Source: Macrostomum lignano | Taxonomy: Eukaryota | Direction: 5' to 3' | Length of the DNA: 64,000 bases | NCBI GenBank assembly: GCA_002269645.1 | Contig: NIVC01000257.1 | Span: 1 to 64,000, forward strand | Shown: piece by piece, positions 9,060 through 61,450 of the stretch | Position numbering within the stretch: the first letter of the stretch is position 1 | How the letters are laid out: each line of letters begins with the position of its first letter | Program-made: the position numbers and the translations under genes | Notes under the pieces: model-generated | Database searches by the model: none | Told to the model about the DNA's origin: nothing | Seen by the model: the letters and a program-made list of their open reading frames with translations, nothing else

Positions 9060-9420
9060 CTGAGACAGGGAGAGATATTGGAATGAGAGGGAGACTAGGG
9101 TGAGATGGCGTAGTGGGGTGAGAGGGAGACTGGGGTGAGATGGCGAGTGGGGTGAGAGGGAGACTGGGTGAGATGGCGTAGTGGGGTGAGAGGGAGACTA
9201 GGGTGAGATGGCGTAGTGGGGTGAGAGGGAGACTAGGGTGAGATGGCGTAGTGGGGTGAGAGGGAGACTGGGGTGAGATGGCGAGTGGGGTGAGAGGGAG
9301 ACTGGGTGAGATGGCGTAGTGGGGTGAGAGGGAGACTGGGGAGAGATGGCGAGTGGGGTGAGAGGGAGACTGGGGAGAGAGGGAGACTGTGGTGAGAGGG
9401 TAACTGGGGAGGGCGGAGAC
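9060..9420. repeat. About 35-bp G-rich minisatellite (GGGTGAGATGGCGTAGTGGGGTGAGAGGGAGACT)
   Basis: About 9 tandem copies. Confidence 0.92.
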
Positions 9421-13830: not shown

Positions 13831-16800
13831 TTAATTTCCCTGTTGGCCATGTTGATTTCCGGTATGGCGCCATTTATGACTTTGGTTGCCATGGCTACTA
13901 TGATGACTTCGGTTGCCATGGCTACTATGATGACTTCGGTTGCCATGGCTACTATGATGACGGTGGTTGCCATGGCTACCATGATGACTTTGGTTGCCAT
14001 GGCTACCGTGACGACTTTGGTTGCCATGGCTACTATGATGACTTTGGTTGCCATGGCTACCGTGACGACTTTGGTTGCCATGGCTACCATGATGAGTTTG
14101 GTTGCCATGGCTACCATGATGACTTTGACCCTGGTAATTGGGGCCAAAATAGTTGCCATACGAATCGTAATAACCAAAATTGTATTGAACACCATAGGGT
14201 TGATAGCCATTGTAACCATGGAAACCAGTGATTGCCTTCCGGCGGGACGCGGGATGATCGTACGGTTTTGGACGACTTTGCTTCTGATTCTGCCAACTGC
14301 CATCGTGGCTGTTGGCGCTCTGCACTGCAGCCCCACCCGCTTCTGCAGCAACTGCGGCTGGCGGGTCGATCGTTGCTCGGGCCTTGGATTGCTGCTGTGA
14401 CGCCTGCGTTGAGGTATGGTCGGTTGCCATGGTTACCACTGTTACTATTCTTTATCCTTACTTTTCTCTCTACCTAGTCTAGCAACTCTGTTGCCTAGCA
14501 GGTAAACAAAGAAAAAAATCTTATGCATATCAAATAAAATCTATGGTTGCTATGGTTACCTAAGAAAACTGGTTGCTATGGATAACTGAGAGAATCGGCT
14601 GCTATGGTTACCTAAGAAAATTGGTTGCTATGGATAACTGAGAGAATCGGCTGCTATGGTTACCTAAGAAAATTGGTTGCTATGGATAACTGAGAGAATC
14701 GGCTGCTATGGTTACCTAAGAAAATTAGTTGCTATGGATAACTGAGAGAATCGGCTGCTATGGTTACCTAAGAAAATTGGTTGCTATGGATAACTGAGAG
14801 AATCGGCTGCTATGGTTACCTAAGAAAATTGGTTGCTATGGATAACTGAGAGAATCGGCTGCTATGGTTACCTAAGAAAATTGGTTGCTATGGATAACTA
14901 AAAAAATCGGTTGCTATGGACAACTAATAAAATCGGTTGCTATGGTTACCTAAGAAAATTGGTTACTAAGGTACCTAAAGAATGGTTGCTACGGTGCCTC
15001 AGTAAAATCGGTTGCCACGGGTATCCAAGAGAATTGGTTGCCTAGGGTTACACCAGGGACAATGTTGCAATGGCTACCAAATGACGCGATTACTTTATTA
15101 TCACATCATTACCCAAAAAAGGCCTCCCCATCAACGCCCAGCTTTTACCGCAACGGCACGCAGGTCGGCCAGATAATTCTCCCGCTCAATAGGGAAGCCG
15201 CGGGCCTCAGCAAACGCGGCGATGGCTTTTTCGGCCGGCCAGCCGTCGACGTCGATCAGGTAGCGGCAGATCATGTAGCCGGTGCGGTTCACCCCGTGGG
15301 TGCAGTGCACAGCTACCACCGAGTCTGGGGGGGGGGGGGGGTGATTGCAAACTCAGGAATTCCACTCGCGAAATCAATTGCTTTTGAGGAAATTGGCTCG
15401 GATGTGGATTCCGTTAAGATTTTTTTTGCAATAGAGATTTGGGATTTCCGCTGAGATTCTCTGGGATTTGGGACTTAATCTGAGATTCTCTTTGGGATTT
15501 GGGTCTTCCGCTAACATTTTCATAGGGGTTTGGGATTTCCGTTGAGATTCTCTTAGGAATTTGGGATTTCCGTTGAGATTCTCTTAGGGATTTGGGATTT
15601 CCGTTGAGATTCTCTTAGGGATTTGGGATTTCCGTTGAGATTCTCTTAGGGATTTGGGATTGCTGTTGGGATTCTCTTAGGGATTTGGGATTTCCGTTGA
15701 GATTCTCTTAGGAATTTGGGATTTCCGTTGGGATTCTCTTAGGGATTTAGGATTCCTGTTGGGATTCTCTTAGGGATTTGGGATTTCCGTTGAGATTCTC
15801 TCAGGGATTTGGGATTTCCGTTGAGATTCTCTTAGGGATTTGGGATTCCCGTTGGCATTTTATGGAGCATGGATTTGCTAAGATACTCGTAGATAACACG
15901 GAAAATTACGAGTTTAACCCTATAGGAGATATGATTAACAGGAATGGCTTTTACACCGAAACAAAGACCGGTGTATTTTACACGCGAACAAAGACTCACC
16001 AGGAGATTCCTGTCTGAACTGGTTGACCACGGCTTCGAATCTGGAAGAGGATTATTTTTAAGCAGAGAGGCGGCGTGGAGAAGATGACAAAACGGCGTTC
16101 ATACGTTGTAGCTTTGATTTATTCACCTGCTTATGCACTTTTGGTCAGGGATGTTGTGGCCTTCAACAAAGATTTTCTCGTATTTCACTCCCTGGCTGGT
16201 GAATTCCTAGAATTCGAAAATTTATTTTTTTGCCAGCCATTGAAACTTCAAACCTCTTAAAATGTTTACAACTACCTCAATCATATGAAAATCCAAAATT
16301 TAATCCCCAAAAATCAGATTCATAAAAATCCCCCAAAAAATCAGATTCATAAAAATCCCCCATAAAATCCCCAAAAATCAGACCCATAAAAATCCCCCAA
16401 AAATCAGATCCATAAAAATCCCCCAAAAATCAGACCCATAAAAATCCCCCAAAAATCAGATCCATAAAAATCCCCTAAAAAATCAGACCCATAAAAATCC
16501 CCCAAAAATCAGACCCATAAAAATCCCCCAAAAATCAGACCCATAAAAAATCCCCCAAAAATCAGATCCATAAAAATTCCCCAAAAATCAGACCCATAAA
16601 AATCCCCTTAAGGCAGGTTTACCTGAGGGTTGTAGTACCGAGTAGTGAAAGTGAGATCCACCACCAGTCCCAGTGGCAGCTTCATCTGTTTGCACCTGTT
16701 CATCAGCTCGGACGGGGTGAACTGCTCATGAGCTGGCATTGAGGCAACGTAGCACTGCGAATGCAATACAAAATAGTTTCTTTTACAAAGCAATCATTGT

Positions 16801-18987: not shown

Positions 18988-21109
18988 TTAAATCGGCCTA
19001 ATGCCAACCAGTTTTCTAAGCTGCTCAAAAATCATAAAAGTGATAACAGTGTGCGGCCCGATCCGCATCCAGTTCGGCACGAATCCTTTATAGAGGCCGG
19101 TCAGACCTTCGGTCCTGATGGCGGCAGCGGCGCAAGAGAACGCATTGGAATAGGCGGCTCCACGAAGGCCCACCGTGTCCTGGTTCATCACCCGGGTCTT
19201 CACTACATCCAATGGTGAGGTTGTGATGGCGCACATCAGCCCGGCGAACATGCTGGCTAGAAAGTGCAAAGGCAGGCCCTCTTTGAGCAGGCCTCTGCTC
19301 AGCATGGTGTGCTTAAAGTGATCGTAGGATGGCACCTGCAATGATGAGGGATCTTGTGTCTTAATGTGGAGTGCTGACCTGACTCTGACATCCTCAAAAA
19401 CACCAAATCTGAACAAAACATACTATCTGACCGATTTAGACACAAAATCTGACCCATTAACACAAAAGCTGACCTATAAACACAAAATCTGACCCATAAA
19501 CACAAAAATGACCTATAAACACAAATAACGTGACTGATAATAAATACACTAAACCTAACCCATAAATACACTAAATCCGTCTCATAAAAAACACACTAAA
19601 CCTGACCCATAAATACACTAAACCTGACCCATAAATACACTAAATCTGACCCATAAATACACTAAATCTGACCCATAAATACACTAAATCTGACCCATAA
19701 ATACACTAAAACTGACCCATAAACACTAAATCTGACCCATAAACACTAAATCTGACCCATAAACACACTAAATCTGTCCCATAAACACTAAATCTGACCC
19801 ATAAACACTAAAACTGACCCATAAAAACACTAAATCTGACCCATAAACACTAAATCTGACCCATAAACACTAAAACTGACCCATAAACACTAAATCTGAC
19901 CCATAAACACTAAATCTGACCCATAAACACTAAAACTGACCCATAAATACACTAAATCTGACCCATAAACACTAAAACTGACCCATAAACACTAAAACTG
20001 ACCCATAAACACACTAAACCTGACCCATAAACACTAAAACTGACCCATAAAAACACTAAAACTGACCCATAAACACTAAATCTGACCCATAAACACTAAA
20101 ACTGACCCATAAAAACACTAAATCTAACCCATAAACACACTAAATCTGTCCCATAAACACTAAAACTGACCCATAAACACTAAAACTGACCCATAAACAC
20201 ACTAAACCTGACCCATAAACACACTAAATCTGTCCCATAAACACTAAAACTGACCCATAAACACTAAAACTGACCCATAAACACTAAATCTGACCCATAA
20301 ACACTAAATCTGTCCCATAAACACTAAAACTGACCCATAAACACTAAAACTGACCCATAAACACTAAAACTGACCCATAAACACTAAAACTGACCCATAA
20401 ACACACTAAATCTGTCCCATAATAAACACACTAAACCTGTCCCATAAACACACTAAACCTGTCCCACAAACACACTAAGTCTGACCCATAAGCACACCAA
20501 TCTGACCCATAAACACCCTAAATCTGACCCAGCCTAACCCAAACCAAGCAGCAGACTGACCTGAGTAGCGGTGACAACAGCGGCCCGGGCTACAGTCGGC
20601 CCGATGCCCTTGTACAGGGCAGGCACGCCGCCCTCCGCATAGATACTAACAAAAGCGTGCCAGGTGCCGCGGTACCTGGCCCCGGACTCGAACGCCTGCA
20701 TTCGAACTTTCACTAAATCCGTAGGCGTAGCCACAGCGCTACCCAGCACGCCGGTGACAGCGCCCGAACAGATTTTCTTCCACAACGAGAAGTTAGCCGG
20801 ATCGGTCTCCCCGAACAGCCGCTTGACAGGCTCGTACAGGCCCACCCGGATGGCCCCGTAGCCGCCATCGCGCATCATCGACGGCACGACGCCTTTGTAC
20901 AGACCGCGAAGGCCTTCGTTGCGGACCACGGTGGCCAGGCCGCGAATGAAACCGGCGTAGCGAGCGCTGCTCGTCCGGTTGGCTGCTTCGCCTTGGATCT
21001 GCAGGCGAATCTTCACCACGTCTACAGGATTGGTGACCACCGCCGCCGTCAGGTTGGAGCAGCCGGCCAGGCCCACCCGGACCCAGTCGCTTTCCGGCTG
21101 CTGCTGCTG
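18988..21109 (-). CDS. Mitochondrial carrier (SLC25), uncoupling-protein-like (invertebrate UCP4/5 / ucpB type), about 300 aa; start codon not in this exon
   Basis: Exons (minus) about 21109-20561 (CAG|GTCAGT) and 19335-18988. Three carrier signatures (PVDVVKIR, PTDLVKVR, PLDVVKTR). AATAAA 5 nt after the stop. The ORF-track 'M' at 21121 is GTG and an in-frame TGA lies just upstream. Confidence 0.92.
19565..20535. repeat. 20-22-bp minisatellite (CTGACCCATAAACACTAAAT), about 45 copies, UCP intron
   Basis: Tandem units running up to the donor. Confidence 0.95.
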
Positions 21110-21139
21110 CTGCGGGTTCACGATAATAGCAGCACCGTA

Positions 21140-22389: not shown

Positions 22390-22815
22390 GTTCCCATCAA
22401 CCAATCAAAAAATCGCTGCAGTTCTCTCTATTCTCCCAACCAATCAAAAAATCGCTGCAGTTCTCTCTATTCTCCCAACCAATCAGAGAATCGCTGCAGT
22501 TCTCTCTATTCTCCCAACCAATCAGAGAATCGCTGCAGTTCTCTCTATTCTCCCAACCAATCAGAGAATCGCTGCAGTTCTCTCTATTCTCCCAACCAAT
22601 CAGAGAATCGCTGCAGTTCTCTCTATTCTCCCAACCAATCAGAGAATCGCTGCAGTTCTCTCTATTCTCCCAACCAATCAGAGAATCGCTGCAGTTCTCT
22701 CTTTCCTCCAACCAATCAGAGAATCGCTGCAGTTTTCTTATTCTACCAACCAATCAGAGAATCGCTGCAGTTCTTTCGATTCCCCCAACCAATCAGAGAA
22801 TCGCTGCAGTTTTCT
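22390..22815. repeat. 39-bp minisatellite carrying AACCAATCAG (CCAAT box), 11 copies
   Basis: CCAACCAATCAGAGAATCGCTGCAGTTCTCTCTATTCTC units. Confidence 0.95.
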
Positions 22816-22842
22816 CATACCGTTTTGAATTTCCAGCTCTAA

Positions 22843-25335
22843 CTAACAGTTCCCATCCTGCTCAGTGAGCCGCAGCCACTCCAGCAGGGCCATCTTGGTC
22901 CCGGTGCTAACCCGGTTCTTGGCGTCAGGCCTGCAGCTGAGCAATTGTGAAACCTGTACCGGAACCTCGGACCTATCCAGAGACCAGCTGGGTACCGTTT
23001 CCTCATCTGGAGTTTCTTCTCTGCTATTCTGAAAATTGGAGGGGATTGCGCTATTGGTGTGTTGCTCTATTACTGTCTCTCACACTTCCAGATCTCCGAC
23101 TCTTCGTGACTTTCTGTCACTCTTCATGACGTTCTCTATTCATGACGTTCTGTCACTCTTTATGACTTTCTGTCACTCTTTATGACTTTCTGTCACTCTT
23201 TATGACGTTCTCTCTTCATGACGTTCTGTCACTCTTCATGACTTTCTGTCACTCTTTATGACTCTGTCACTCTTCATGACGTTCTGTCACTCTTTATGAC
23301 TTTCTGTCACTCTTTATGACTTTCTGTCACTCTTCATGACTTTCTGTCACTCTTTATGACTCTGTCACTCTTCATGACGTTCTGTCACTCTTTATGACTT
23401 TCTGTCACTCTTTATGACTGTTTTTATGACTTTCTGTCACTCTTCATGACTTTCGGTCACTCTTCGTGACTTTCTGTCACTCTTCATGACTTTCTGTGAC
23501 TCTTTATGACTTTCTGTCACTCTTCATGACGTTCTGTCACTATTCATGACGTTCTCTCTTCATGACGTTCTGTCACTCTTTATGAATTTCTGTCACTCTT
23601 TATGACTCTGTCACTCTTCATGACGTTCTGTCACTATTAATGACGGTCTGTCACTATTAATGATGGTCTGTCACTATTAATGACGGTCTGTCACTATTAA
23701 TGACGTTCTGTCACTCTTCATGACGTTCTGTCACTCTTCATGACGGTCTGTCACTATTAATGACGGTCTGTCACTATTAATGACGTTCTGTCACTCTTCA
23801 TGACGTTCTGTCACTCTTCATGACGGTCTGTCACTATTAATGACGGTCTGTCACTATTAATGACGTTCTGTCACTCTTCATGACGTTCTGTCACTCTTCA
23901 TGACGTTCTGTCACTCTTCATGCCGTTCTGTCACTCTTCATGATGTTCTGTCACTCTTCATGACGTTCTGTCACTCTTTATGACGTTCTGTCACTCTTCA
24001 TGACGTTCTGTCACTCTTCATGACGTCCTGTCACTCTTCAGCATGACCTTCACTAATTTACACTCTCGCTGTCTCAGCAGACAAGCCCTAGTCGCAGAAG
24101 TGCAGCACAGCTAACCTGACGATCGCCATCATCGGCTAGGCCGTCGCCTTCTTCAAGCAGCAAAGTGCCGCCGATCCGCCTGGCCAGCCGGCGGTCAATC
24201 CAAACCAGCCGGTCCACCTCGCGCGGCTCCGGCTTGGCGGCCGAGGTCAGGCTAGCCGAAGACTCCGACAGTCTGGCGTGGAAGTACAGCACCAGATGGT
24301 GCCTAGCAGGCCAGCCAATGTCCAGACTGGCCGGGAACACGGACTCCCAGGCCGTGAGCAGGCGAATTGGCGGCCCGGCTCCGCCAGCAGGCAGGGTCAG
24401 GCCGACCTCCTCTGCCAGCTCTCTGGCCGCTGCCTGTGCGGCGGTCTCGCCGAGGTCCAGATGACCGCCTGGCGGCACCCACACCTCCGGGAAGGCGGAC
24501 ATGCCGGCCGGGCGCCTGGTGAGCAGCAGGCGACCGTCGCCAGATTCCAGCAGTATAGCGGCTGCGGCCGCTACGCGAGTGAAACGACGGCGGGTGTCAG
24601 CAGCGTCGGGCTGCAAGGGGGAGCATTCAGCAGGGGTGGACTGTGGTGATCACTCCGCCAAGCATCTGATGAACACCTTTTGCTTAATTGTTAAACTCCC
24701 CGTGTCATACTTAAACAGCCCTCTCTCTCTCTCCATTTTTAAACTGCCCTAGAGAGCTTAAACACACGACACCAATAAACTACCTAAGAGGCTTAAATCC
24801 TCATTGTTAAACACCCTAGCCCAATAGGCTTAAACACACCACACTGCTAAACTACCCTAACTCAATAGGCTTAAACACAGCACACTGCTAAACTACCTAA
24901 GAGGCTTAAACACAGCACACTGCTAAACTAAGAGGCTTAAACATCCCTTGTTAACCCTCCCACTCACACTCCCCCTAGCCACCAGACCCCTGGTTGCAGC
25001 CGCACCTGAGCGGGAGGCTGCAAACCGACACCTTCGGCAATCTTGGCCACCGGGCAGTCGGCAGGCCGGTGCAGCTCTGTGTGATGCGTTGACGTCGCCG
25101 AACTGTCAAGCAGTCCAGCGTCGATAGATTCGCAAGTCCGAGCACGAAGCGGCGACAGGCAGACGCGATCCGGCAGCAGGTCGATGGTCACCTGAGCTGA
25201 GCGGCCGGGCCTTCGGGCTCCAGGCGGAGCGCCAAGCCGGCGCACGCAGCCCAGCAGTGATTCAGCAAAGCCCGGGTAGCGGTTCTCGGCCGGGCAGTAC
25301 ACGAACATGGGGACTCTGCGTAGGCGGAGCCACAT
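22843..25335 (-). CDS. NUDT17: Nudix hydrolase 17-like, about 336 aa
   Basis: Exons (minus) 25335-25006, 24610-24116, 23028-22843, all phase 0. LLLTRR, WVPPGGHLDLGETAAQAAARELAEEVGL (Nudix box), RHHLVLYF, and C-terminal RVSTGTKMALLEWL typical of NUDT17. Exact start codon uncertain. Confidence 0.88.
23100..24045. repeat. 20-bp minisatellite (TCATGACGTTCTGTCACTCT), NUDT17 intron 2
   Basis: About 47 variant copies. Confidence 0.95.
24755..24950. repeat. Degenerate about 37-bp repeat (GGCTTAAACAC...CTAAACTACC), NUDT17 intron 1
   Basis: About 5 copies. Confidence 0.7.
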
Positions 25336-25850: not shown

Positions 25851-26589
25851 AGGCGTGTGGGTTCAACCAACGATATATAGAAAGAAAAAGGAATGTTTAT
25901 TTTCGTAAAAATGTATTAAAATGTTGATTTCATACTTTTTCTGCAGATTTTAAATTTACGTTTTAAATTTTAAGCAAAAATAAAACAAACAAACATACAA
26001 CACTACTCATAGTGGCAAACAGAAACGAAGACAAATCACTTGCTACAATTAATAAAGTCCATATCGATTTTTAATAGCCTTATTTCAGAGTCCTATACAA
26101 CAGTGAATATATAGACTATATATATTTCTATAATAGCAGAATGTTGACAGAAAGAGTGTAAAACTGGATTTTAAAAAGAAACACAAAGACAAGCACGCAA
26201 AACTGCAATGTTTAACAGCAGGAAATTAATAAAAGGTCAACGCTGAAGTCACAATACGGAAAAATTAAGATCTAAAGGATAATAGACACAAAGATTGAGT
26301 GAAAATTTGCAAGTATAATCCTTATAACAGTTGCATAAGTAGTTTAGTTAGGGCAAAATATAGCCAGCACGAGAAGCCCGTCAATCAATAGGTCGAGATG
26401 GTTCCTAATTCAGCTATTACATGGTCTTAGAGGACACGTTCACGTGTATTATTATAAATATGCTTATGTCTCTAACCATAATACAACTTTTTGTTCTTAT
26501 CTGAATACTATTAGTGAGTTAATAGTTGCGATTAACTGACCTAAGATTGGGACACTCAACCTAGGATATTCAGACTCCATTCTAATGTT

Positions 26590-26930
26590 GTGATTCCCCT
26601 TGATAAAATTAGGATTCCCCGCACCAAGATTGGGATTCCCCGTTCTAATATGGGGATGCCCGTCCTAAGATTGGGATTCCCTGTCCTAACATTGGAATTC
26701 CCCGTCCTAATATTGGGATTCCCCGTTCTAATATTGGGATGCTCGTCCTAAGATTGTGATTCCCCGTTCCAATATTGGGATGCCTGTCCTAAGATTGGGA
26801 TTCCCCATCCTAATATTGGGATTTCTCGTCCTAAGATTGGGATTCCCCATCCTAATATTGGGATTCCCCGTCCGAAGATTGGGATTCCCGTCCTAATATT
26901 GGGATTCCCCGTCCTAGATTGGGGTTCCCG
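26590..26930. repeat. 21-22-bp minisatellite (TAA[G/T]ATTGGGATTCCCCGTCC)
   Basis: About 15 copies. Confidence 0.9.
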
Positions 26931-27110: not shown

Positions 27111-28195
27111 TCAATACAGGCTGGTCTTCTTCATAATCCGCAGAAATTCCGACTCGTTAATCTCGCCGTCGCCGTCCCTGTCGGCTTCGTCGATCATCTC
27201 CTGAAGCTCCTCGTCTGTGAGATTCTCGCCCAGCTCCTTGGCAACGCGTTTCAAATTTTTAAACGAAATCTTGCCAGTCTCGTCGTCGTCGAATAGGCGG
27301 AAGGCTTTGAGAATCTCCTCCTTCGAGTCTTTCTCCGTCATCTTGCTGGTCATCATACTTAGGAAGTCGTTAAAGTCGATGGTGCCTTCGTGGAGGAAGT
27401 CGGGTTTCGTTAATTAATACAATGTAGAAAATTTAATTGTGAGAGCTCATAGAAGAAGATAGAACAGATGGAACATCATCAGGTACTCGTCCAGCACATG
27501 GAAAATTGTATAAGAACACCTGGGGAACACATGAGAACACCTGGGGAACACATGAGAACACCTGGGGAACATGAGAACACCTGGGGAACACATGAGAACA
27601 CCTGGGGAACACATGAGAACACCTGGGGAACACATGAGAACACCTGGGGAACACATGAGAACACCTGGGGAACACAAAAGAACACCTAGGGAACACATAA
27701 GAACAGCTGGGGAACACATAGAACACTGGGGGACACATAAGAACAGTGGGGAACACATATGAACTGCTGGGTAACACATAAGAACAGCTGGGGAACGCAT
27801 GAGAACACCTGGGGAACACAGTATTAATTGACAGGCTGTCTACCAAACGATTAAAAAAAGTAGCACATGTCTGCAACTAGACTGAGGCCTACAGTCAACC
27901 TGCCCACCCTACTGCAGAATGAATCTCCTAATAAAAGCTCGAAGAAGCCCTCACCTGTGCCTTCCTTGTCGTACTCGGCAATCAGCTTCTTAATCTCTTC
28001 TTTCTTGGGCTCGAAGCCGAGCGCCCGCATGGCCACCTTCAGTTCCTTGATGTCGATGGTGCCGGAGCCGTCGTTATTAAATAGGTCAAATGCTTCGCGA
28101 ATCTCCTGCTTCTGCTCCTCGGACAGCTCCAGCTTGATGCCGGCCGTCTTCTTCTTCTGGCCGCCGCCAGGGCTTGGCTTCTTGAAGGTCGACAT
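27111..28195 (-). CDS. CETN2: Centrin (CETN1/2-type, caltractin), 171 aa
   Basis: Exons (minus) 28195-27955 (G|GTGAGG) and 27385-27111. [63 protein letters not shown]. Confidence 0.96.
27500..27820. repeat. 21-bp minisatellite (GAACACCTGGGGAACACATGA), centrin intron
   Basis: About 14 copies. Confidence 0.93.
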
Positions 28196-28199
28196 GCAT

Positions 28200-28590
28200 G
28201 AGACAGCAATGAGTACAGACAGCAATGAGCACAGTCACAGACTGCAATGAGCACAGACTGCAATGAGACAGCAATGAGTACAGACTGCAATGAGCACAGA
28301 CTGCAATGAGACAACAATGAGCACAGACTGCAATGAGACAGCAATGAGCACAGACTGCAATGAGTACAGACTGCAATGAGCACAGACTGCAATGAGTACA
28401 GACTGCAATGAGCATAGACTGCAATGAGTACAGACTACACTGAGCAGTGAGCACAGATTGCAATGAGACAACAATGAGTAAAGTGCTTAATCAGTACAGA
28501 CTGTAATGAGTAGACTGTAATGAGTACAGACTGTAATGACAATGAGTATAGACTATAATGAGACAGCAATGAGTAGACTATAGAGAGTAG
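28200..28590. repeat. 16/26-bp minisatellite (CAGACTGCAATGAG[C/T]A) abutting the centrin ATG
   Basis: Starts 5 nt upstream of the ATG. Confidence 0.92.
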
Positions 28591-42295: not shown

Positions 42296-43004
42296 TTCTT
42301 TATTGTTTTAGCCTAACGCTGGCCATGTGAATTATCGTAAGCCGTCTAGTAGTAGCTTACTATCGCTTAGTCTAAAAGGAGAGCTAGCTAGCTACCTAAC
42401 TAGTCGACTTGCAAGAATGAATGCGGGAACGAATAGAGGGCAGTTTTATAAACTGCAGTTTAGCTGTGCAGTTGTTGTCCAATCCGAGTGCGGCCTTCCC
42501 TCTAGTCTAGAAAAACCCTTGCCGTTCAGCCGGCAACCCCTCCCCCTCATTTTGGGCCGTCCTTGCCAATTTTTCAGCCCGGTATGTACGCTGCGTCTAT
42601 TTTTAGCCCGCGTGGACCTGGGACCAGCGGGGGGGAACAGTGTACATACGCGGCTATAGCGTACACTAACTAGCATACGAGTACAAAGGTATATCAAAAC
42701 AGGCTAAAAGCGGTTATGGGAACTGTCACAAGCCTTTATACCATCTCCGTTCTGCTTATGCCTATACCAAAAAATAAAAAACTACACAGAGAACAGGCGT
42801 GGACCCAGAAAATTGTGAACGGGGTGGCGCAGATTACAAGTTATCTTTGTTTTTGATTTTTTACCAAGGCGCGTCACCTCCGACACGTCCCCCCCCCAGT
42901 AAAAGCTATGGAGTGGACATGCTAATGCTTTGCCCCCCCCCACCCCACCTTGTGGCCCGTTGTGACAACAATATTTTTTCTTCAGAGCGCCAAAATATAG
43001 CGCC

Positions 43005-43260
43005 TTCGGCGCCAAAATGAGTGCCTGCGGCTCCAAAATGAGTGCCTGCGGTGCCATAATGAGTGCCTTTGGCGCCAAAATGAGTGCCTGCAGCGCTATA
43101 ATGAGTGCCTGCGGCGCTAAAACGAGTGCCTGCGGCGCCAAAATGAGTGCCTGCGGCGCCAATATGAGTGCCTGGGGCGCCAATATGAGTGCCTGCGGCG
43201 CTATAATGAGTGTCTGTGGCGCCAAAATGAGTGCCTGCTGCGCCGAAATGAGCGCTGACA
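43005..43260. repeat. 21-bp minisatellite (GCCTGCGGCGCCAAAATGAGT), about 12 copies
   Basis: Tandem units, several with GGCGCCAAAA. Confidence 0.92.
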
Positions 43261-58995: not shown

Positions 58996-59904
58996 GGCAT
59001 TAGTACACGAACACAATTCTCTCCCAGACATCTAGCACAAAACACAAATGTCTTAGAAGCATTTCTATGAGAACTTGCGTTCATTAGTCACATTTCCGCA
59101 AAGACGCGCGTCCTTCAAAAGCATTTCTTCCAATCAAGTTCAGTCCCATGGAGTCACGTGTCCCCAGAGGACGCAGGACTGACCAAAACTGAGAGGACTT
59201 TAAACTAAAGTCAGTGAGCGATTTTTCTAATAACTCTCCAGAGATGAGCGGTCACAATTGGTCTCGAGCAGTCGATAACCCAGAGGGGACATCTCGAATT
59301 CCTCTGCCAAAGAAATCAATGTCTCTGTCAACAGTCAAGTCCATCGACATTGGAATTTCGTGCCCTCGATGCTTGCTCCCGAACTCGATGTTCAGCTGCT
59401 AACATGGCTCCTTCTAGAAGCAATTAGCTGTCCAACTTTCTCAAAGCCCAAAAAATTCCGAGCATTCCGTCCGTCTGGGGGGGGGACAAGGAGAGCAGAA
59501 AAGCCGTCCAAACTTCATTCAATCTCTTTCGCTCTTTGTTCTCAAATCTTCAATCACGGGCGGCGCTGAGAGGCTGCGAGGAGCTGATTAATTCTTTTCG
59601 AATCCTTCATCCCAGCCAGCAGATGCAGCTCGGCCAGGCAAGGGAGCAAGCAGAAAAAGAAAATGGAGTGGGCGGAGATCCCAGCAGTGTGTTGACCTCC
59701 GGGACCCGACAGGCTGGCCCTCCTAATTGTATTACAGAAGTCTGCGATGCCGACTCCAGGAAACTGACGATGATGAGGAGCGAAAATGGGAGGCTGGCGT
59801 TGGGGACAACGCCGGAGGTAATGGCGGGCTCTGATTCCCGCTGGACAAAAATATAATGTCCATGAACTGTCGGGTCAGATGGCGGCTCATCCTATTCACT
59901 TGGG

Positions 59905-60255
59905 ATGGCTAATCTAGCCAGTGTGGATTTAGGATTAGGAGTGGATTGCTAATCTAGCCAATGTGGATTAAGGATTAGGAGTGGATTGCTAATCTAGCCA
60001 ATGTGGATTTAGGATTAGGAGTGGAATGCTAATCTAGCCAATGTGGATTTAGGATTAGGATTGGATTGCTAATCTAGCCAATGTGGATTTAGGATTAGGA
60101 GTGGATTGCTAATCTAGCTCATATCGATTTAGGATTAGGAGTGGATTGCTAATCTAGCCAATGTGGATTAAGGATTAGGAGTGGATTGCTAATCTAGCCA
60201 ATGTGGATTTAGGATTAGGAGTGGATTGCTAATCTAGCCAATATAGTTAAGGATT
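59905..60255. repeat. 40-bp minisatellite (GCTAATCTAGCCAATGTGGATTTAGGATTAGGAGTGGATT)
   Basis: About 9 copies. Confidence 0.95.
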
Positions 60256-61450
60256 AGAGTCGCAATTTAAAAATCGCTCTCCAAAATTTCTTAGAAATGG
60301 AGTCGAAATCTTGCAAAGCAAGCCGCCAGCCCAGCAAGGCAGTTTCTGAGCAGAAAAAGCTACAAATCCTCCCAGCAATCTCGAGCCAGAGTTGCTATCT
60401 GGACTATCGCAACCCGGCCGCCATTCTCTTCTCCTCCTCTCGAATCGTAATAAAAAGTCGCGAGTGGGCCTGACAACAGTGCGGGGGCCCTGGGCGAGTT
60501 TGTTTGCCATCCAGATGAAGGAATCTGAGCGCTGCAATTTCGTCTTCCTGCTTCTAAGAAGATGAGCAGCAGCAGCAGAGGAAGGGGAGATTCGGGGCAC
60601 TAGAGGGGAAGAGGGGGAATGAGGAAAATAAGGGCAGTGCCAGATTGCCGGCAGCCGGCACTCCCACCTCCGCGGCGCTTTTGTTGACAAGAAACTCTCT
60701 CTCTCTCTCTCTTTGGCAGCTGCGGGCTGATTGCTGCTGGCGGGCGGGCGAGTTCGAGTGGACGGTGCAGAGGAAGGCCGCCATTAGGACTCGGACCGGG
60801 GTCCAGGAGAGATGAAGAATGGGAAGGATGTGAGATGCTGGCGGAAGCTGGCCCGGGGGGGGTTGAGTTCCAACTCTTATAGCAGATAGGAGGGTGAAAA
60901 AGAAATCTGTGTTTGCTTCCTCAAACAGGCTTTCTATCCTTCCCTATCCTTGCTTGTCCGTCGAGTTTCTCCCAGATTTGCCACTCCTGCTCCCAAGTCA
61001 TCCAAAGACTTTCCTAACCGCCAGTTCACCGCCGAGGGAGGGAGGCGCTGGAACTGAGAATGAAAGCGAAGCGTGAGCGAGAGAGTGAATATTGTAATAT
61101 TGGTAGCCAAACTGGAGTACAGTAAGTAGTTCGCAGGTTTCAAAGAGCAAGTTTTTCAAGAGTTCGCTCTGGGAGAGGCAGAGAGGGGTAGGGAGGGAGG
61201 CAGGGGGGTGGCAGCGACTGGTCTGTCACGCTTGCCGTGTTTCTGTAATTAAGTGCCGGCGCACTTTTACAATCCTGCTGCTGAGCCGGTTGCTAATGCT
61301 GCTATGCTCATAGGGATTATGGGTAATGGAAACTTCAGACTTGTAGGATAATAAATTTCTGCACCAATCTAGCCTACATGTACATGGATGAAGCCACTTA
61401 GAAATAACTCAATCAATCGGCACTATATCAAAAGTTACATTCCGAAACCG

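What the first reader, a model, noticed from the sequence alone, without database searches (positions are those of the whole stretch)
13885..15077. Dense RFX X-box array written simultaneously into a coding repeat and the adjacent intron (dual-use DNA)
Seen: nine copies of GTAGCCATGGCAAC (minus strand) at 27-bp spacing in the DUSP11 last exon, where they also encode the S-H-G-N core of the His-rich repeat. Further perfect copies lie at 14212 (GTAACCATGGAAAC, coding GFHGY), 14423, about 14546 and about 14936 (GTAACCAT[A/G]GCAAC). About 14 near-matches sit in the 26/52-bp intron array, and several degenerate ones reach 15077. The exon array and the intron array share only the 14-15-bp motif; their spacers are unrelated, and the decayed copies keep GTTGC..GG..AC while spacers drift. 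Known: these match the RFX/DAF-19 X-box (GTHNYYATRRNAAC; GTNRCC-N0-3-RGYAAC), which controls ciliary genes, and a centrin gene lies about 12 kb away. Inference: a homotypic RFX super-cluster (enhancer or RFX decoy) that may itself have created the protein's His-rich tail by exonisation.
Basis: partly seen in the sequence, partly recalled or inferred. Interest (0 to 1): 0.8.

Follow-up and report, generated by a model that had tools for sequence, protein, structure and literature searches.

The report
X-box-core minisatellites in flatworm DUSP11
Two adjacent tandem repeats in a flatworm phosphatase gene, one coding, are built on a perfect RFX-type X-box, but the same core seeds hundreds of unrelated minisatellites genome-wide, so this looks like one member of a repeat class, not a dedicated cilia enhancer.

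Summary
The window is Macrostomum lignano (Mlig_3_7, contig C257). There are nine exact GTAGCCATGGCAAC at 27-bp spacing in the last coding exon of a DUSP11-like gene, read as S-H-G-N. Exact single copies lie at 14423, 14546 and 14936, and a 26/52-bp intron array carries 1-2-mismatch copies. In the window, 52 of 53 near-matches fall in this stretch (expected 0.02 exact).

Genome-wide the X-box 14-mer is about 70-fold over its reversed control (6162 vs 88). Tandem X-box pairs number 445 vs 0, in at least 21 unrelated unit types. NF-Y-like CCAAT and Rel/kappaB-like cores behave the same way. So this locus is one member of a genome-wide class of "TF-motif-core" minisatellites in a window that is 46% tandem repeat.

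Nothing ties it to centrin, which lies 13 kb away past two other genes and has no X-box of its own. The amplified intron units are the degenerate ones. The intron array differs by four 52-bp units between about 99% identical genome copies.

Exonisation or expansion creating the His-rich tail is plausible: the tail is an orphan. RFX binding is untested. Best reading: core-nucleated, largely neutral minisatellites, one of them in frame.

The parts
13831..14404 (-). Last coding exon (CDS part, including the stop codon) of a DUSP11-like (RNA/RNP complex-1-interacting phosphatase) gene. It encodes ASQQQSK...GYNGYQPYG...(S/R/T)(H/R)H(G/S)SHGN(Q/R/H) x9...QGN*.
   Evidence: My splice model equals the NCBI transcript-based protein P0001, BOX15_Mlig010689g3. 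Pfam DSPc scores 3.8e-14.
13876..14127 (-). Coding 27-bp minisatellite of 9.3 units (9 codons per unit). Each unit holds one exact X-box, GTAGCCATGGCAAC, at 13885 + 27k up to 14101.
   Evidence: None of the 14 X-box columns vary, against 7 of 13 spacer columns (Fisher P=0.0019). There is a 9-bp sub-period. Single-stranded DNA folds at -57.8 kcal/mol, z=-11.2.
14128..14235 (-). Gly/Tyr-rich coding stretch (GFHGYNGYQPYGVQYNFGYYDSYGNYFGPNYQ) with a decayed 9-bp periodicity of the same WTGGYTRCC type. It includes the X-box-like GTAACCATGGAAAC at 14212-14225.
   Evidence: (hits at 14200 and 14209, 9 bp apart).
14405..15148 (-). Last intron (744 bp; donor GCG|gtaaaag, acceptor cgcag|GCG). About 90% of it (14420-15087) is X-box-core repeat.
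   Evidence: junction LRAVA|ASQQQ in P0001.
14423..14436 (-). Single exact X-box, GTAACCATGGCAAC. It lies 19-32 nt upstream of the 3' splice site, in the branch-point zone.
14543..14958 (-). Intronic 26-bp minisatellite organised as a 52-bp higher-order unit. The A unit is ..GGCTGCTATGGTTACC.. and the B unit is ..GGTTGCTATGGATAAC... Exact X-boxes occur only at the edge units, 14546 and 14936.
   Evidence: The array has 19.6 units here against 11.8 in three other genome copies.
14959..15087 (-). Five decayed units. The last one (15061-15087, TGTTGCAATGGCTACCAAATGAC) is closer to the exon-type unit (about 20 of 27) than to the intron type (about 15 of 26).
   Evidence: plus direct reading.
15149..15324 (-). 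Upstream DUSP11 exon with the catalytic loop HCTHGVNRTG. It is shown for context and is not part of the repeat.

Best explanation
The feature is a pair of adjacent minisatellites in the last exon and last intron of the Macrostomum lignano DUSP11-like gene. Both are built on the same 18-bp core, TTGGTTGCYATGGYTACC, which contains a consensus RFX X-box.

They belong to a genome-wide class of M. lignano minisatellites in which a short core identical to a transcription-factor site is combined with unrelated spacers and periods. The cores seen are the RFX X-box, the NF-Y-type CCAATCAG box and the Rel/kappaB-type GGGATTYCC.

Shown:
- The arrays, their core and their coding status.
- The genome-wide recurrence of the core in many unrelated unit types.
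- Copy-number change of the intron array between near-identical genome copies.

Inferred:
- The arrays arise and change length by replication slippage or unequal exchange.
- The core recurs for one or both of two reasons. Over-represented, clustered, palindromic factor sites provide the 11-14-bp direct repeats at which tandem duplication starts. Alternatively, factor-bound sites open chromatin and act as break or recombination hotspots, as CCAATCA and ATGACGT do in fission yeast.
- The core does not recur because this locus needs an RFX enhancer.
- The exon array has a unit of exactly 9 codons, so its expansion was tolerated. It is translated as a lineage-specific His/Gly/Ser/Asn-rich tail. 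The exon array may be bound by RFX, but no regulatory role is required to explain it.
For: Identity of the locus:
- 99% match to the M. lignano protein.
- the assembly statistics match.

Repeat load:
- 46% of the window is TRF array.
- 15% of the genome is simple or tandem repeat (PMC5730564).

Specific enrichment of the core:
- X-box 14-mer: 6162 vs 88.
- Everted half-sites: 257 vs 211, nearly all from one 50-bp satellite.
- Tandem X-box pairs: 445 vs 0, with at least 21 unrelated spacers and periods of 20-54 bp in the first 545 contigs.
- GGTTGCYATGG pairs: 2474 vs 2, with 10 unit types in the first 23 contigs.
- Blast of the intron array finds about 40 further core-sharing arrays at 65-78% identity.

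Generality:
- RCCAATCAGMG pairs: 3394 vs 51.
- GGGATTYCC pairs: 14810 vs 448.
- An arbitrary array-derived 11-mer also shows core sharing, but far more rarely.

Signs of neutral dynamics:
- The intron array has 19.6 vs 11.8 units between copies that are about 99% identical elsewhere.
- The amplified 52-bp unit carries 1- and 2-mismatch X-boxes.
- In non-coding arrays the core is no better conserved than the spacer: 0.136 vs 0.152, 0.109 vs 0.100 and 0.061 vs 0.064.
- Decayed intron units keep their spacers as well as their cores.

No link to a ciliary target:
- There is no X-box anywhere else in the window, including upstream of centrin.

Precedent for factor-site hotspots:
- PMC6827382.

The tail is an orphan.
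Against: - In the exon array the 14 X-box columns are invariant while 7 of 13 spacer columns vary (P=0.0019). This points to some constraint on the core there, whether on protein, DNA or the register of misalignment.
- The nine exon sites are perfect consensus X-boxes and RFX genes are present, so binding is likely at least in vitro.
- Three tandem X-boxes are enough to drive expression in ciliated neurons of C. elegans (bioRxiv 10.1101/2021.02.03.429678), so an effect on transcription cannot be excluded.
- The nucleation or hotspot step is inference. Unit-type counts therefore come from the first 100 rows of each search.
Confidence: 0.55

Rival explanations
1. Functional homotypic RFX cluster. 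The arrays are selected binding platforms for RFX factors. They would act as an intragenic enhancer for DUSP11 or its neighbours in ciliated or germ cells, or as a sink that buffers free RFX.
For: - There are nine perfect consensus sites and more than 14 near-sites within 1.2 kb.
- The X-box arrangement is specifically enriched genome-wide, and everted half-sites are not.
- Four RFX genes, each in three copies, are present.
- The core is invariant in the exon array.
- Synthetic 3x X-box constructs are sufficient in C. elegans.
- About 30% of all consensus X-boxes in the genome sit in arrays, so a sink effect is conceivable.
Against: - Canonical X-boxes act singly or in pairs close to promoters. 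These lie in the last exon and intron of a non-ciliary gene.
- Centrin is 13 kb away behind two genes and has no X-box.
- The intron amplification propagated degenerate sites.
- Copy number differs between near-identical genome copies.
- Non-coding arrays show no conservation of core over spacer.
- The same architecture holds for CCAAT, kappaB-like and even an arbitrary core, so a general mutational process is the more economical explanation.
Confidence: 0.17
2. Coding first. The motif in the exon is a by-product of a Gly-X-(His/Asn/Gln) tripeptide (9-bp) repeat, in which GGT-AGC-CAT-GGC-AAC reads G-S-H-G-N. Protein-level selection keeps it, and the intron array is a secondary spill-over of exon units.
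For: - The 27-bp unit has a 9-bp sub-period, and the upstream Gly/Tyr-rich coding part has the same decayed period.
- The invariant columns are the SHGN codons.
- The most distal decayed intron unit (15061) resembles the exon unit, including part of its spacer (read directly).
- The exon array is identical in all genome copies.
Against: - The same core builds many arrays whose periods are not multiples of 3 (20, 22, 23, 25, 26, 31, 41, 49-50 bp), so they cannot be coding.
- Two of the three minus-strand frames and two plus-strand frames are open through the array. Public models read it in different frames (P0002 and P0003).
- The tail has no homologues that would indicate protein-level conservation.
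- Zero differences in 252 bp between copies is not significant at 0.7% divergence.
Confidence: 0.15
3. Transposon-derived. The arrays are remnants of internal or terminal tandem repeats (enhancer repeats) of a mobile element that carries X-boxes.
For: - A double X-box (GTTGCCATGGCAACCAAAACGCGTTGCCATGGCAAC) lies in a conserved element of at least 87 nt. It is present at 40 or more scored places, with 155 candidates.
- LTR elements make up 21% of the genome.
Against: - That element recurs at about 3-3.7-kb spacing in tandem on single contigs, which looks more like a tandem gene or unit family.
- Its flanks share nothing with the DUSP11 arrays.
- There are no transposase or RT ORFs and no terminal repeats around 12-17 kb.
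- The nine single X-boxes on contig C1 have unrelated flanks.
- The unit types have unrelated spacers.
Confidence: 0.08
4. Chance. One of the window's roughly 45 arbitrary minisatellites simply happens to contain an X-box-like word.
For: The window is 46% tandem repeat with very diverse units. The nine exon copies trace back to one amplified unit.
Against: - At least four independent contexts carry the motif within 1.2 kb: the exon unit, two intron unit types, and the singles at 14212 and 14423.
- There are no matches elsewhere in the window.
- Genome-wide, tandem pairs number 445 vs 0.
Confidence: 0.02

Closest known systems
RFX/DAF-19 X-box promoter elements of ciliary genes (GTNRCC-N0-3-RGYAAC; nematode GTHNYYATRRNAAC)
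   Same: The sequence is identical to the consensus, with an AT spacer and a palindromic arrangement. The genome encodes RFX DNA-binding domains. Single copies with unrelated flanks are 20-40 times over expectation.
   Different: From my own knowledge, known functional X-boxes are single or paired and promoter-proximal. Here there are 9 + about 16 copies in a last exon and intron of a phosphatase gene, arranged as a minisatellite. No binding or expression data exist.
Core-sharing minisatellite families (Jeffreys-type hypervariable minisatellites with a common 10-15-bp core) - from my own knowledge
   Same: Tandem 20-50-bp units are found at many loci with different units but a shared short core. 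Copy number varies between copies.
   Different: The core here is a canonical transcription-factor site rather than a chi-like G-rich word. Several such TF-like cores coexist in one genome.
Transcription-factor-dependent recombination hotspot motifs of fission yeast (M26 ATGACGT/Atf1-Pcr1; CCAATCA/Php2-3-5) - PMC6827382
   Same: The very words CCAATCA and ATGACGT occur as minisatellite cores in this genome (window array 23099-24040). This offers a precedented route from factor binding to local breaks and unequal exchange.
   Different: No recombination data exist for M. lignano. RFX is not among the yeast hotspot factors. The link to array birth is inference.
Coding minisatellites / in-frame VNTRs that create low-complexity protein tails (for example mucin and prion-octarepeat type repeats) - from my own knowledge
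   Same: The unit is a multiple of 3 (27 bp = 9 aa), is in frame, lies inside an annotated CDS and gives a His/Gly/Ser/Asn-rich tail.
   Different: The unit doubles as a perfect palindromic TF site. An array with the same core continues in the adjacent intron. The tail is an orphan.
Synthetic or natural homotypic TF-site arrays used as enhancers (3x X-box reporter in C. elegans, bioRxiv 10.1101/2021.02.03.429678)
   Same: Tandem full X-boxes; sufficiency for expression has been shown in another animal.
   Different: Those arrays sit upstream of a minimal promoter. Activity of the present arrays is untested.

Membership tests
RFX X-box cis-regulatory element | Sequence matches GTNRCC-N0-3-RGYAAC | tested here: met
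   12 exact matches and 52 of 53 matches at up to 2 mismatches lie in 13885-15077.
RFX X-box cis-regulatory element | A cognate RFX factor is encoded in the genome | tested here: met
   PF02257 hits over the cut-off at 12 places, which is 4 genes in 3 copies each.
RFX X-box cis-regulatory element | Promoter-proximal position upstream of a ciliary or RFX-target gene | tested here: not met
   The copies lie in the last exon and last intron of a DUSP11-like gene. Centrin is 13 kb away, has no X-box upstream, and two genes lie between.
RFX X-box cis-regulatory element | Bound by RFX and required for expression | not testable with these tools
   Needs ChIP/CUT&Tag, EMSA, a reporter assay and RNAi.
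Minisatellite family with a shared core | Head-to-tail units of about 10-100 bp | tested here: met
   27-bp x 9.3 and 26/52-bp x 19.6.
Minisatellite family with a shared core | The same short core at many loci with otherwise unrelated units | tested here: met
   At least 21 unit types for the full X-box and 10 for GGTTGCYATGG within the listed rows. Pair counts are 445 vs 0 and 2474 vs 2.
Minisatellite family with a shared core | Copy-number instability | tested here: met
   The intron array has 19.6 vs 11.8 units between genome copies that are about 99% identical. The exon array is stable at 9 units.
Coding (in-frame) minisatellite | Unit length is a multiple of 3, the array lies inside the CDS, and the frame stays open | tested here: met
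   27 bp = 9 codons. P0001 contains the nine repeats.
Coding (in-frame) minisatellite | The repeat is actually translated | not testable with these tools
   The annotation is transcript-based, but no proteomic evidence is at hand. Other public models read another frame.
Homotypic TF-site cluster enhancer / decoy | Sites conserved above flanking or spacer sequence | tested here: inconclusive
   In the exon array 0 of 14 core columns vary against 7 of 13 spacer columns (P=0.0019). The intron array and other non-coding arrays show no difference.
Transposable-element-derived satellite | Shared element flanks, terminal repeats or element ORFs | tested here: not met
   There are no such ORFs or terminal repeats in 12-17 kb. 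Spacers and flanks are unrelated among arrays and among singles.
DUSP11/PIR1-type phosphatase (host gene) | DSPc domain with an HCxxGxxR(S/T) loop; best relatives are RNA/RNP complex-1-interacting phosphatases; no guanylyltransferase domain | tested here: met
   The loop is HCTHGVNRTG. Pfam DSPc scores 3.8e-14. Relatives are 40-50% identical and named DUSP11-like.

The most novel reading that the evidence does not exclude
In Macrostomum lignano, occupied transcription-factor sites (RFX X-box, NF-Y CCAAT box, Rel/kappaB-like site, perhaps the CRE) are the nucleation or hotspot cores that generate much of the genome's large minisatellite load. The X-box arrays, including the coding one in DUSP11, would then be RFX-bound in vivo. 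They would act both as expansion-prone recombination or replication hotspots and as a sizeable sink or platform for RFX. About 30% of all consensus X-boxes lie in arrays.
Probability: 0.2. Interest if true: 0.8.

Novelty: new variant of a known kind. Interest (0 to 1): 0.5.

Why it matters
Why minisatellites at different loci share short cores is an old open question. Here the cores are recognisable transcription-factor sites, seen in dozens of unrelated unit types. M. lignano has transgenesis, RNAi and a duplicated karyotype that supplies internal replicates. The idea that factor binding seeds tandem-repeat birth therefore becomes directly testable.

Locally, the finding shows how a non-coding repeat class can add a new low-complexity tail to a conserved enzyme.

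It also carries a practical warning. Genome-wide X-box scans for ciliary genes in this species will be contaminated by roughly 1,600 array-borne sites. The extra sites in the multi-copy double-X-box element are a further possible contaminant, but what that element is remains undetermined.

Tried and rejected
Unit-type counts therefore rest on the first 100 rows of the pattern searches.
- Reading long flanks with N-padded patterns failed. One pattern was over the 35-place limit. Fixed 50/70-nt gaps returned only one place.
- The look-up of encoding contigs holds no record for P0001.
- Rfam gives only sub-threshold miRNA-hairpin look-alikes (at most 30 bits against gathering scores of 74-113). 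These are caused by the palindromic cores and I rejected them as RNA genes.
- Hairpin-driven slippage as a general cause is rejected. The exon array folds strongly (z=-11.2) but the intron array does not (z=+1.05).
- A search for other proteins with the SHGN repeat tail found none outside the M. lignano models. No orthologue comparison of synonymous sites was therefore possible.
- The four extra genome copies are too similar (about 0.7% divergence) to test constraint.
- Three rows of the core-versus-spacer analysis (L035, L037, L040) were mis-oriented and discarded.
- Literature searches for X-box/RFX together with minisatellite or Macrostomum found nothing relevant.
Full report
**What the window is**

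A spliced model of the gene at 13.8-17 kb is 99% identical to the NCBI protein BOX15_Mlig010689g3 of Macrostomum lignano (P0001). G000 has 764,410,778 bp and its longest contig is 2,680,987 bp. These figures match the published Mlig_3_7 assembly, which is reported as 15% simple or tandem repeat, 21% LTR elements and highly redundant because of duplicated chromosomes (PMC5730564).

The window itself is 46% TRF-detectable tandem array, with about 45 arrays of very different units.

The gene has a DSPc domain with the loop HCTHGVNRTG. Its best relatives outside the species are RNA/RNP complex-1-interacting phosphatases (DUSP11) at 40-50% identity over the catalytic half. Neighbours on the minus strand are a mitochondrial-carrier gene (18991-21139), a NUDIX gene (24077-24649) and a centrin-type EF-hand gene (27114-28234).

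**Check of the observation**

- TRF finds a 27-bp array at 13876-14127 (9.3 units) and a 26/52-bp array at 14544-15051.
- The consensus GTNRCCATRGYAAC has 12 exact matches in the window, all on the minus strand. Nine are GTAGCCATGGCAAC at 27-bp spacing (13885...14101). The others are at 14423, 14546 and 14936. Shuffles give 0.02.
- At up to 2 mismatches, 52 of 53 matches lie in 13885-15077.
- With all spacer lengths from 0 to 3 there is no further match anywhere in the window.
- The site at 14212 fits only the nematode consensus.

The nine exon copies nevertheless trace back to one amplified unit. The independent occurrences number about four or five: the exon unit, two intron unit types and two singles.

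**Gene structure**

- The junction LRAVA|ASQQQ of P0001 corresponds to the donor GCG|gtaaaag (exon end 15149) and the acceptor cgcag|GCG (exon start 14404).
- The last intron is 15148-14405, and about 90% of it is core-containing repeat.
- The last exon's CDS runs from 14404 to the stop codon at 13831-13833.
- The annotation behind P0001 is transcript-guided.
- Each 27-bp unit is nine codons, (S/R/T)(H/R)H(G/S)SHGN(Q/R/H), and the X-box is [G]-S-H-G-N.
- Two UniProt models (P0002, P0003) splice inside the array, using the AG of GTAGCC, and read it as VAMAT.
- Four of the six frames are open through the array.
- The single X-box at 14423-14436 lies 19-32 nt upstream of the 3' splice site.

**Local anatomy**

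- The two arrays share TTGGTTGCYATGGYTACC, 18 bp with two transitions. Their 8-9-bp spacers are unrelated (ATGATGACT versus TAAGAAAA / TGAGAGAA).
- The exon unit has an internal 9-bp sub-period (TTGGTTGCC / ATGGCTACC / ATGATGACT). The Gly/Tyr-rich coding stretch just upstream (14128-14235) shows the same decayed period.
- Within the exon array none of the 14 X-box columns varies, while 7 of 13 spacer columns do (Fisher P=0.0019).
- In the intron array the amplified 52-bp unit carries a one-mismatch site and a two-mismatch site. Exact sites are only at the edges.
- Mismatch rates in the intron array are the same in core and spacer (0.136 vs 0.152).
- The decayed units at 14959-15087 keep their spacers about as well as their cores.
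- The most distal decayed unit (15061) is closer to the exon-type unit, which hints at a common ancestral array. This is an inference from direct reading.

**Other copies in the genome**

Contigs C4636, C1647, C1646 and (truncated) C846 carry the same locus.

- Unique parts differ at about 0.7% (6 of 882 positions).
- The exon array is identical in all copies (252 of 252; nine units).
- The intron array has 11.8 instead of 19.6 units, a difference of exactly four 52-bp units.
- The intron array is therefore dynamic on a very short time scale.
- The identity of the exon array is not statistically informative at this divergence.

**Genome-wide context**

| Pattern | Observed | Reversed control |
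|---|---|---|
| X-box 14-mer GTNRCCATRGYAAC | 3033 + 3129 | 44 + 44 |
| Everted half-sites RGYAACATGTNRCC | 257 | 211 |
| Tandem X-box pairs, 5-40 bp apart | 445 | 0 |
| Tandem GGTTGCYATGG pairs | 2474 | 2 |

- Nearly all everted-half-site matches come from one 50-bp satellite.
- Among the first 100 rows of the 14-mer search there are 82 unique sites, 56 single and 26 in six clusters. Scaled up, that is about 3,450 single sites and about 1,600 sites in about 370 clusters.
- The nine single sites on contig C1 have unrelated flanks.
- The listed tandem X-box pairs include at least 21 unit types with unrelated spacers and periods of 20, 21, 22, 27, 29, 33, 41, 42, 49 and 50-54 bp. The DUSP11 exon array, with eight consecutive pairs, is among the densest.
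- The GGTTGCYATGG pairs fall into ten unit types in the first 23 contigs.
- Blast of the locus finds about 40 further arrays resembling the intron array at 65-78% identity. Those I could read (L003, L006, L009, L015, L034-L040) have periods of 9, 20, 27, 32 and 84 bp around the same GGTTGCTATGG.
- In the non-coding arrays tested, the core is not better conserved than the rest.
- The genome encodes RFX DNA-binding domains at 12 places, which is four genes in three copies each.

**The pattern is not peculiar to the X-box**

| Core | Tandem pairs | Control | Unit types in the listed rows |
|---|---|---|---|
| RCCAATCAGMG (NF-Y-type CCAAT box) | 3394 | 51 | about 20 in 18 contigs |
| GGGATTYCC, mostly GGGATTTCCC / GGGATTCCCC (Rel/kappaB decamer) | 14,810 | 448 | at least 13 in 11 contigs |
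| ACTATAGAGTA (arbitrary 11-mer from a window array) | 299 | 204 | five |

The first hit of the arbitrary 11-mer is on contig 257. Sharing of a short core between otherwise unrelated units is thus a general trait of this genome's minisatellites. TF-like cores are one to two orders of magnitude more diverse than the arbitrary word.

**Most likely mechanism**

Shown:
- Membership of a genome-wide core-sharing minisatellite class.
- In-frame coding status.
- Copy-number instability.

Inferred:
- The arrays are born by tandem duplication between two nearby copies of an over-represented, clustered site. Because the X-box is palindromic, two sites always form a direct repeat. Doublets such as GTTGCCATGGCAAC-N8-GTTGCCATGGCAAC exist at many loci.
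- Alternatively or in addition, they are born at factor-opened, break-prone sites. In fission yeast CCAATCA (Php2-3-5) and ATGACGT (Atf1-Pcr1) are protein-dependent recombination hotspots (PMC6827382). Both words occur as array cores here.
- The arrays then expand and contract by slippage or unequal exchange.
- The 27-bp unit keeps the frame, so an expansion inside, or captured into, the last exon produced a new tail. That tail has no relative among 5.8 billion proteins.

This reading does not need RFX-dependent regulation at this locus, and it does not exclude RFX binding.

**Rivals**

- A selected RFX enhancer or decoy (0.17). It is favoured by the perfect sites, the invariant exon core and the sufficiency of 3x X-box reporters in C. 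elegans. It is disfavoured by position, degenerate amplification, instability, lack of core conservation in non-coding arrays and the generality across cores.
- A coding-first origin (0.15). It is favoured by the 9-bp tripeptide period and the SHGN invariance. It is disfavoured by the many arrays with periods that are not multiples of 3 and by the orphan, frame-ambiguous tail.
- A transposon origin (0.08). No supporting element structure is present at this locus.
- Chance (0.02). Effectively excluded.

**Comparison with the known, and novelty**

- The motif passes the sequence test for an RFX X-box. It fails the positional test, and the functional tests could not be run.
- The arrays pass every test I could run for a core-sharing minisatellite family and for an in-frame coding minisatellite.
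- I found no paper describing X-box, CCAAT or kappaB-type cores in Macrostomum repeats, or X-box minisatellites in general.
- I therefore file it as a new variant of a known kind.

**Verdict and limits**

The finding as worded (a dedicated RFX super-cluster near centrin) is over-interpreted. The underlying pattern of TF-site-core minisatellites, one of them coding, is real, specific and worth a proper census.

- Unit-type counts come from truncated listings.
- The TF names rest on consensus matches recalled from general knowledge.
- No binding, expression, recombination or cross-species data were available.

Noticed in passing
genome-wide; window 22398-22816 (39-bp unit CAACCAATCAGAG...), 59903-60257: NF-Y-type CCAAT-box words (RCCAATCAGMG) are the core of many minisatellites with unrelated spacers. 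There are 3394 tandem pairs vs 51 for the reversed control, and about 20 unit types in the first 18 contigs. The word contains the fission-yeast hotspot motif CCAATCA.
   Followed up: partly
genome-wide; window 15432-15854 (next DUSP11 intron, GGGATTTCC) and 26588-26929 (GGGATTCCCC): Rel/kappaB-like GGGATTYCC(C) is an even commoner minisatellite core. There are 14,810 tandem pairs vs 448 for the control, and at least 13 unrelated unit types in 11 contigs.
   Followed up: partly
G000 contigs C491:332139, C2517 (46441, 55466, 58473, 61452, 64463), C4055, C149, C374 and others: A double X-box (GTTGCCATGGCAAC-CAAAACGC-GTTGCCATGGCAAC) sits in an element of at least 87 nt, conserved at 88-100% at 40 or more scored places (155 candidates). 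Copies are often 3-3.7 kb apart in tandem. This is a multi-copy unit, either a gene family with an RFX-type promoter or a mobile element; which one is not determined.
   Followed up: partly
window 23099-24040 (ACTCTTCATGACGTTCTGTC), 42987-43252 (GCGCCAAAATGAGTGCCTGCG), 9084-9409 (..GAGATGGCG..): Other window arrays carry CRE/M26-like ATGACGT, E2F-like TTTTGGCGC and YY1-like GATGGCG words. These were picked out after looking at the data, so no statistics are attached.
   Followed up: no
L032 (G000:C1646, copy of window about 14135-14140): One genome copy has CCC instead of CCCC in the GPNYQ codons just upstream of the coding array. This would shift the array into the VAMAT frame, which also stays open. 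It may be a homopolymer assembly error.
   Followed up: no
window 13876-14127: The coding array folds into a row of hairpins between neighbouring palindromic cores (single-stranded DNA -57.8 kcal/mol, z=-11.2). It draws sub-threshold Rfam miRNA-precursor hits (at most 30 bits). The intron array does not fold (z=+1.05).
   Followed up: yes
window 14423-14436: An exact single X-box lies 19-32 nt upstream of the 3' splice site of the last intron, in the expected branch-point zone. Its half-sites (GTAAC/GCAAC) resemble branch-point words.
   Followed up: no
window 15327-15341: A (G)15 run, which is C15 on the coding strand, forms the polypyrimidine tract of the acceptor of the catalytic exon. Its length is 10-11 in other genome copies (L030, L031).
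   Followed up: no
window 1-64000: 46% of the window is tandem array, against 15% reported for the genome. Nearly every intron and intergenic stretch holds one or more 10-40-bp minisatellites. Several cores recur between arrays (GGATCTGGGA, CTCTATCCA).
   Followed up: partly
G000:C1:297006-297409 (L003): A 9-bp array, (GGTTGCTAT)n, with a 63-bp higher-order unit is made of the X-box half-site alone. It has the same 9-bp period as the sub-structure of the DUSP11 coding unit.
   Followed up: partly
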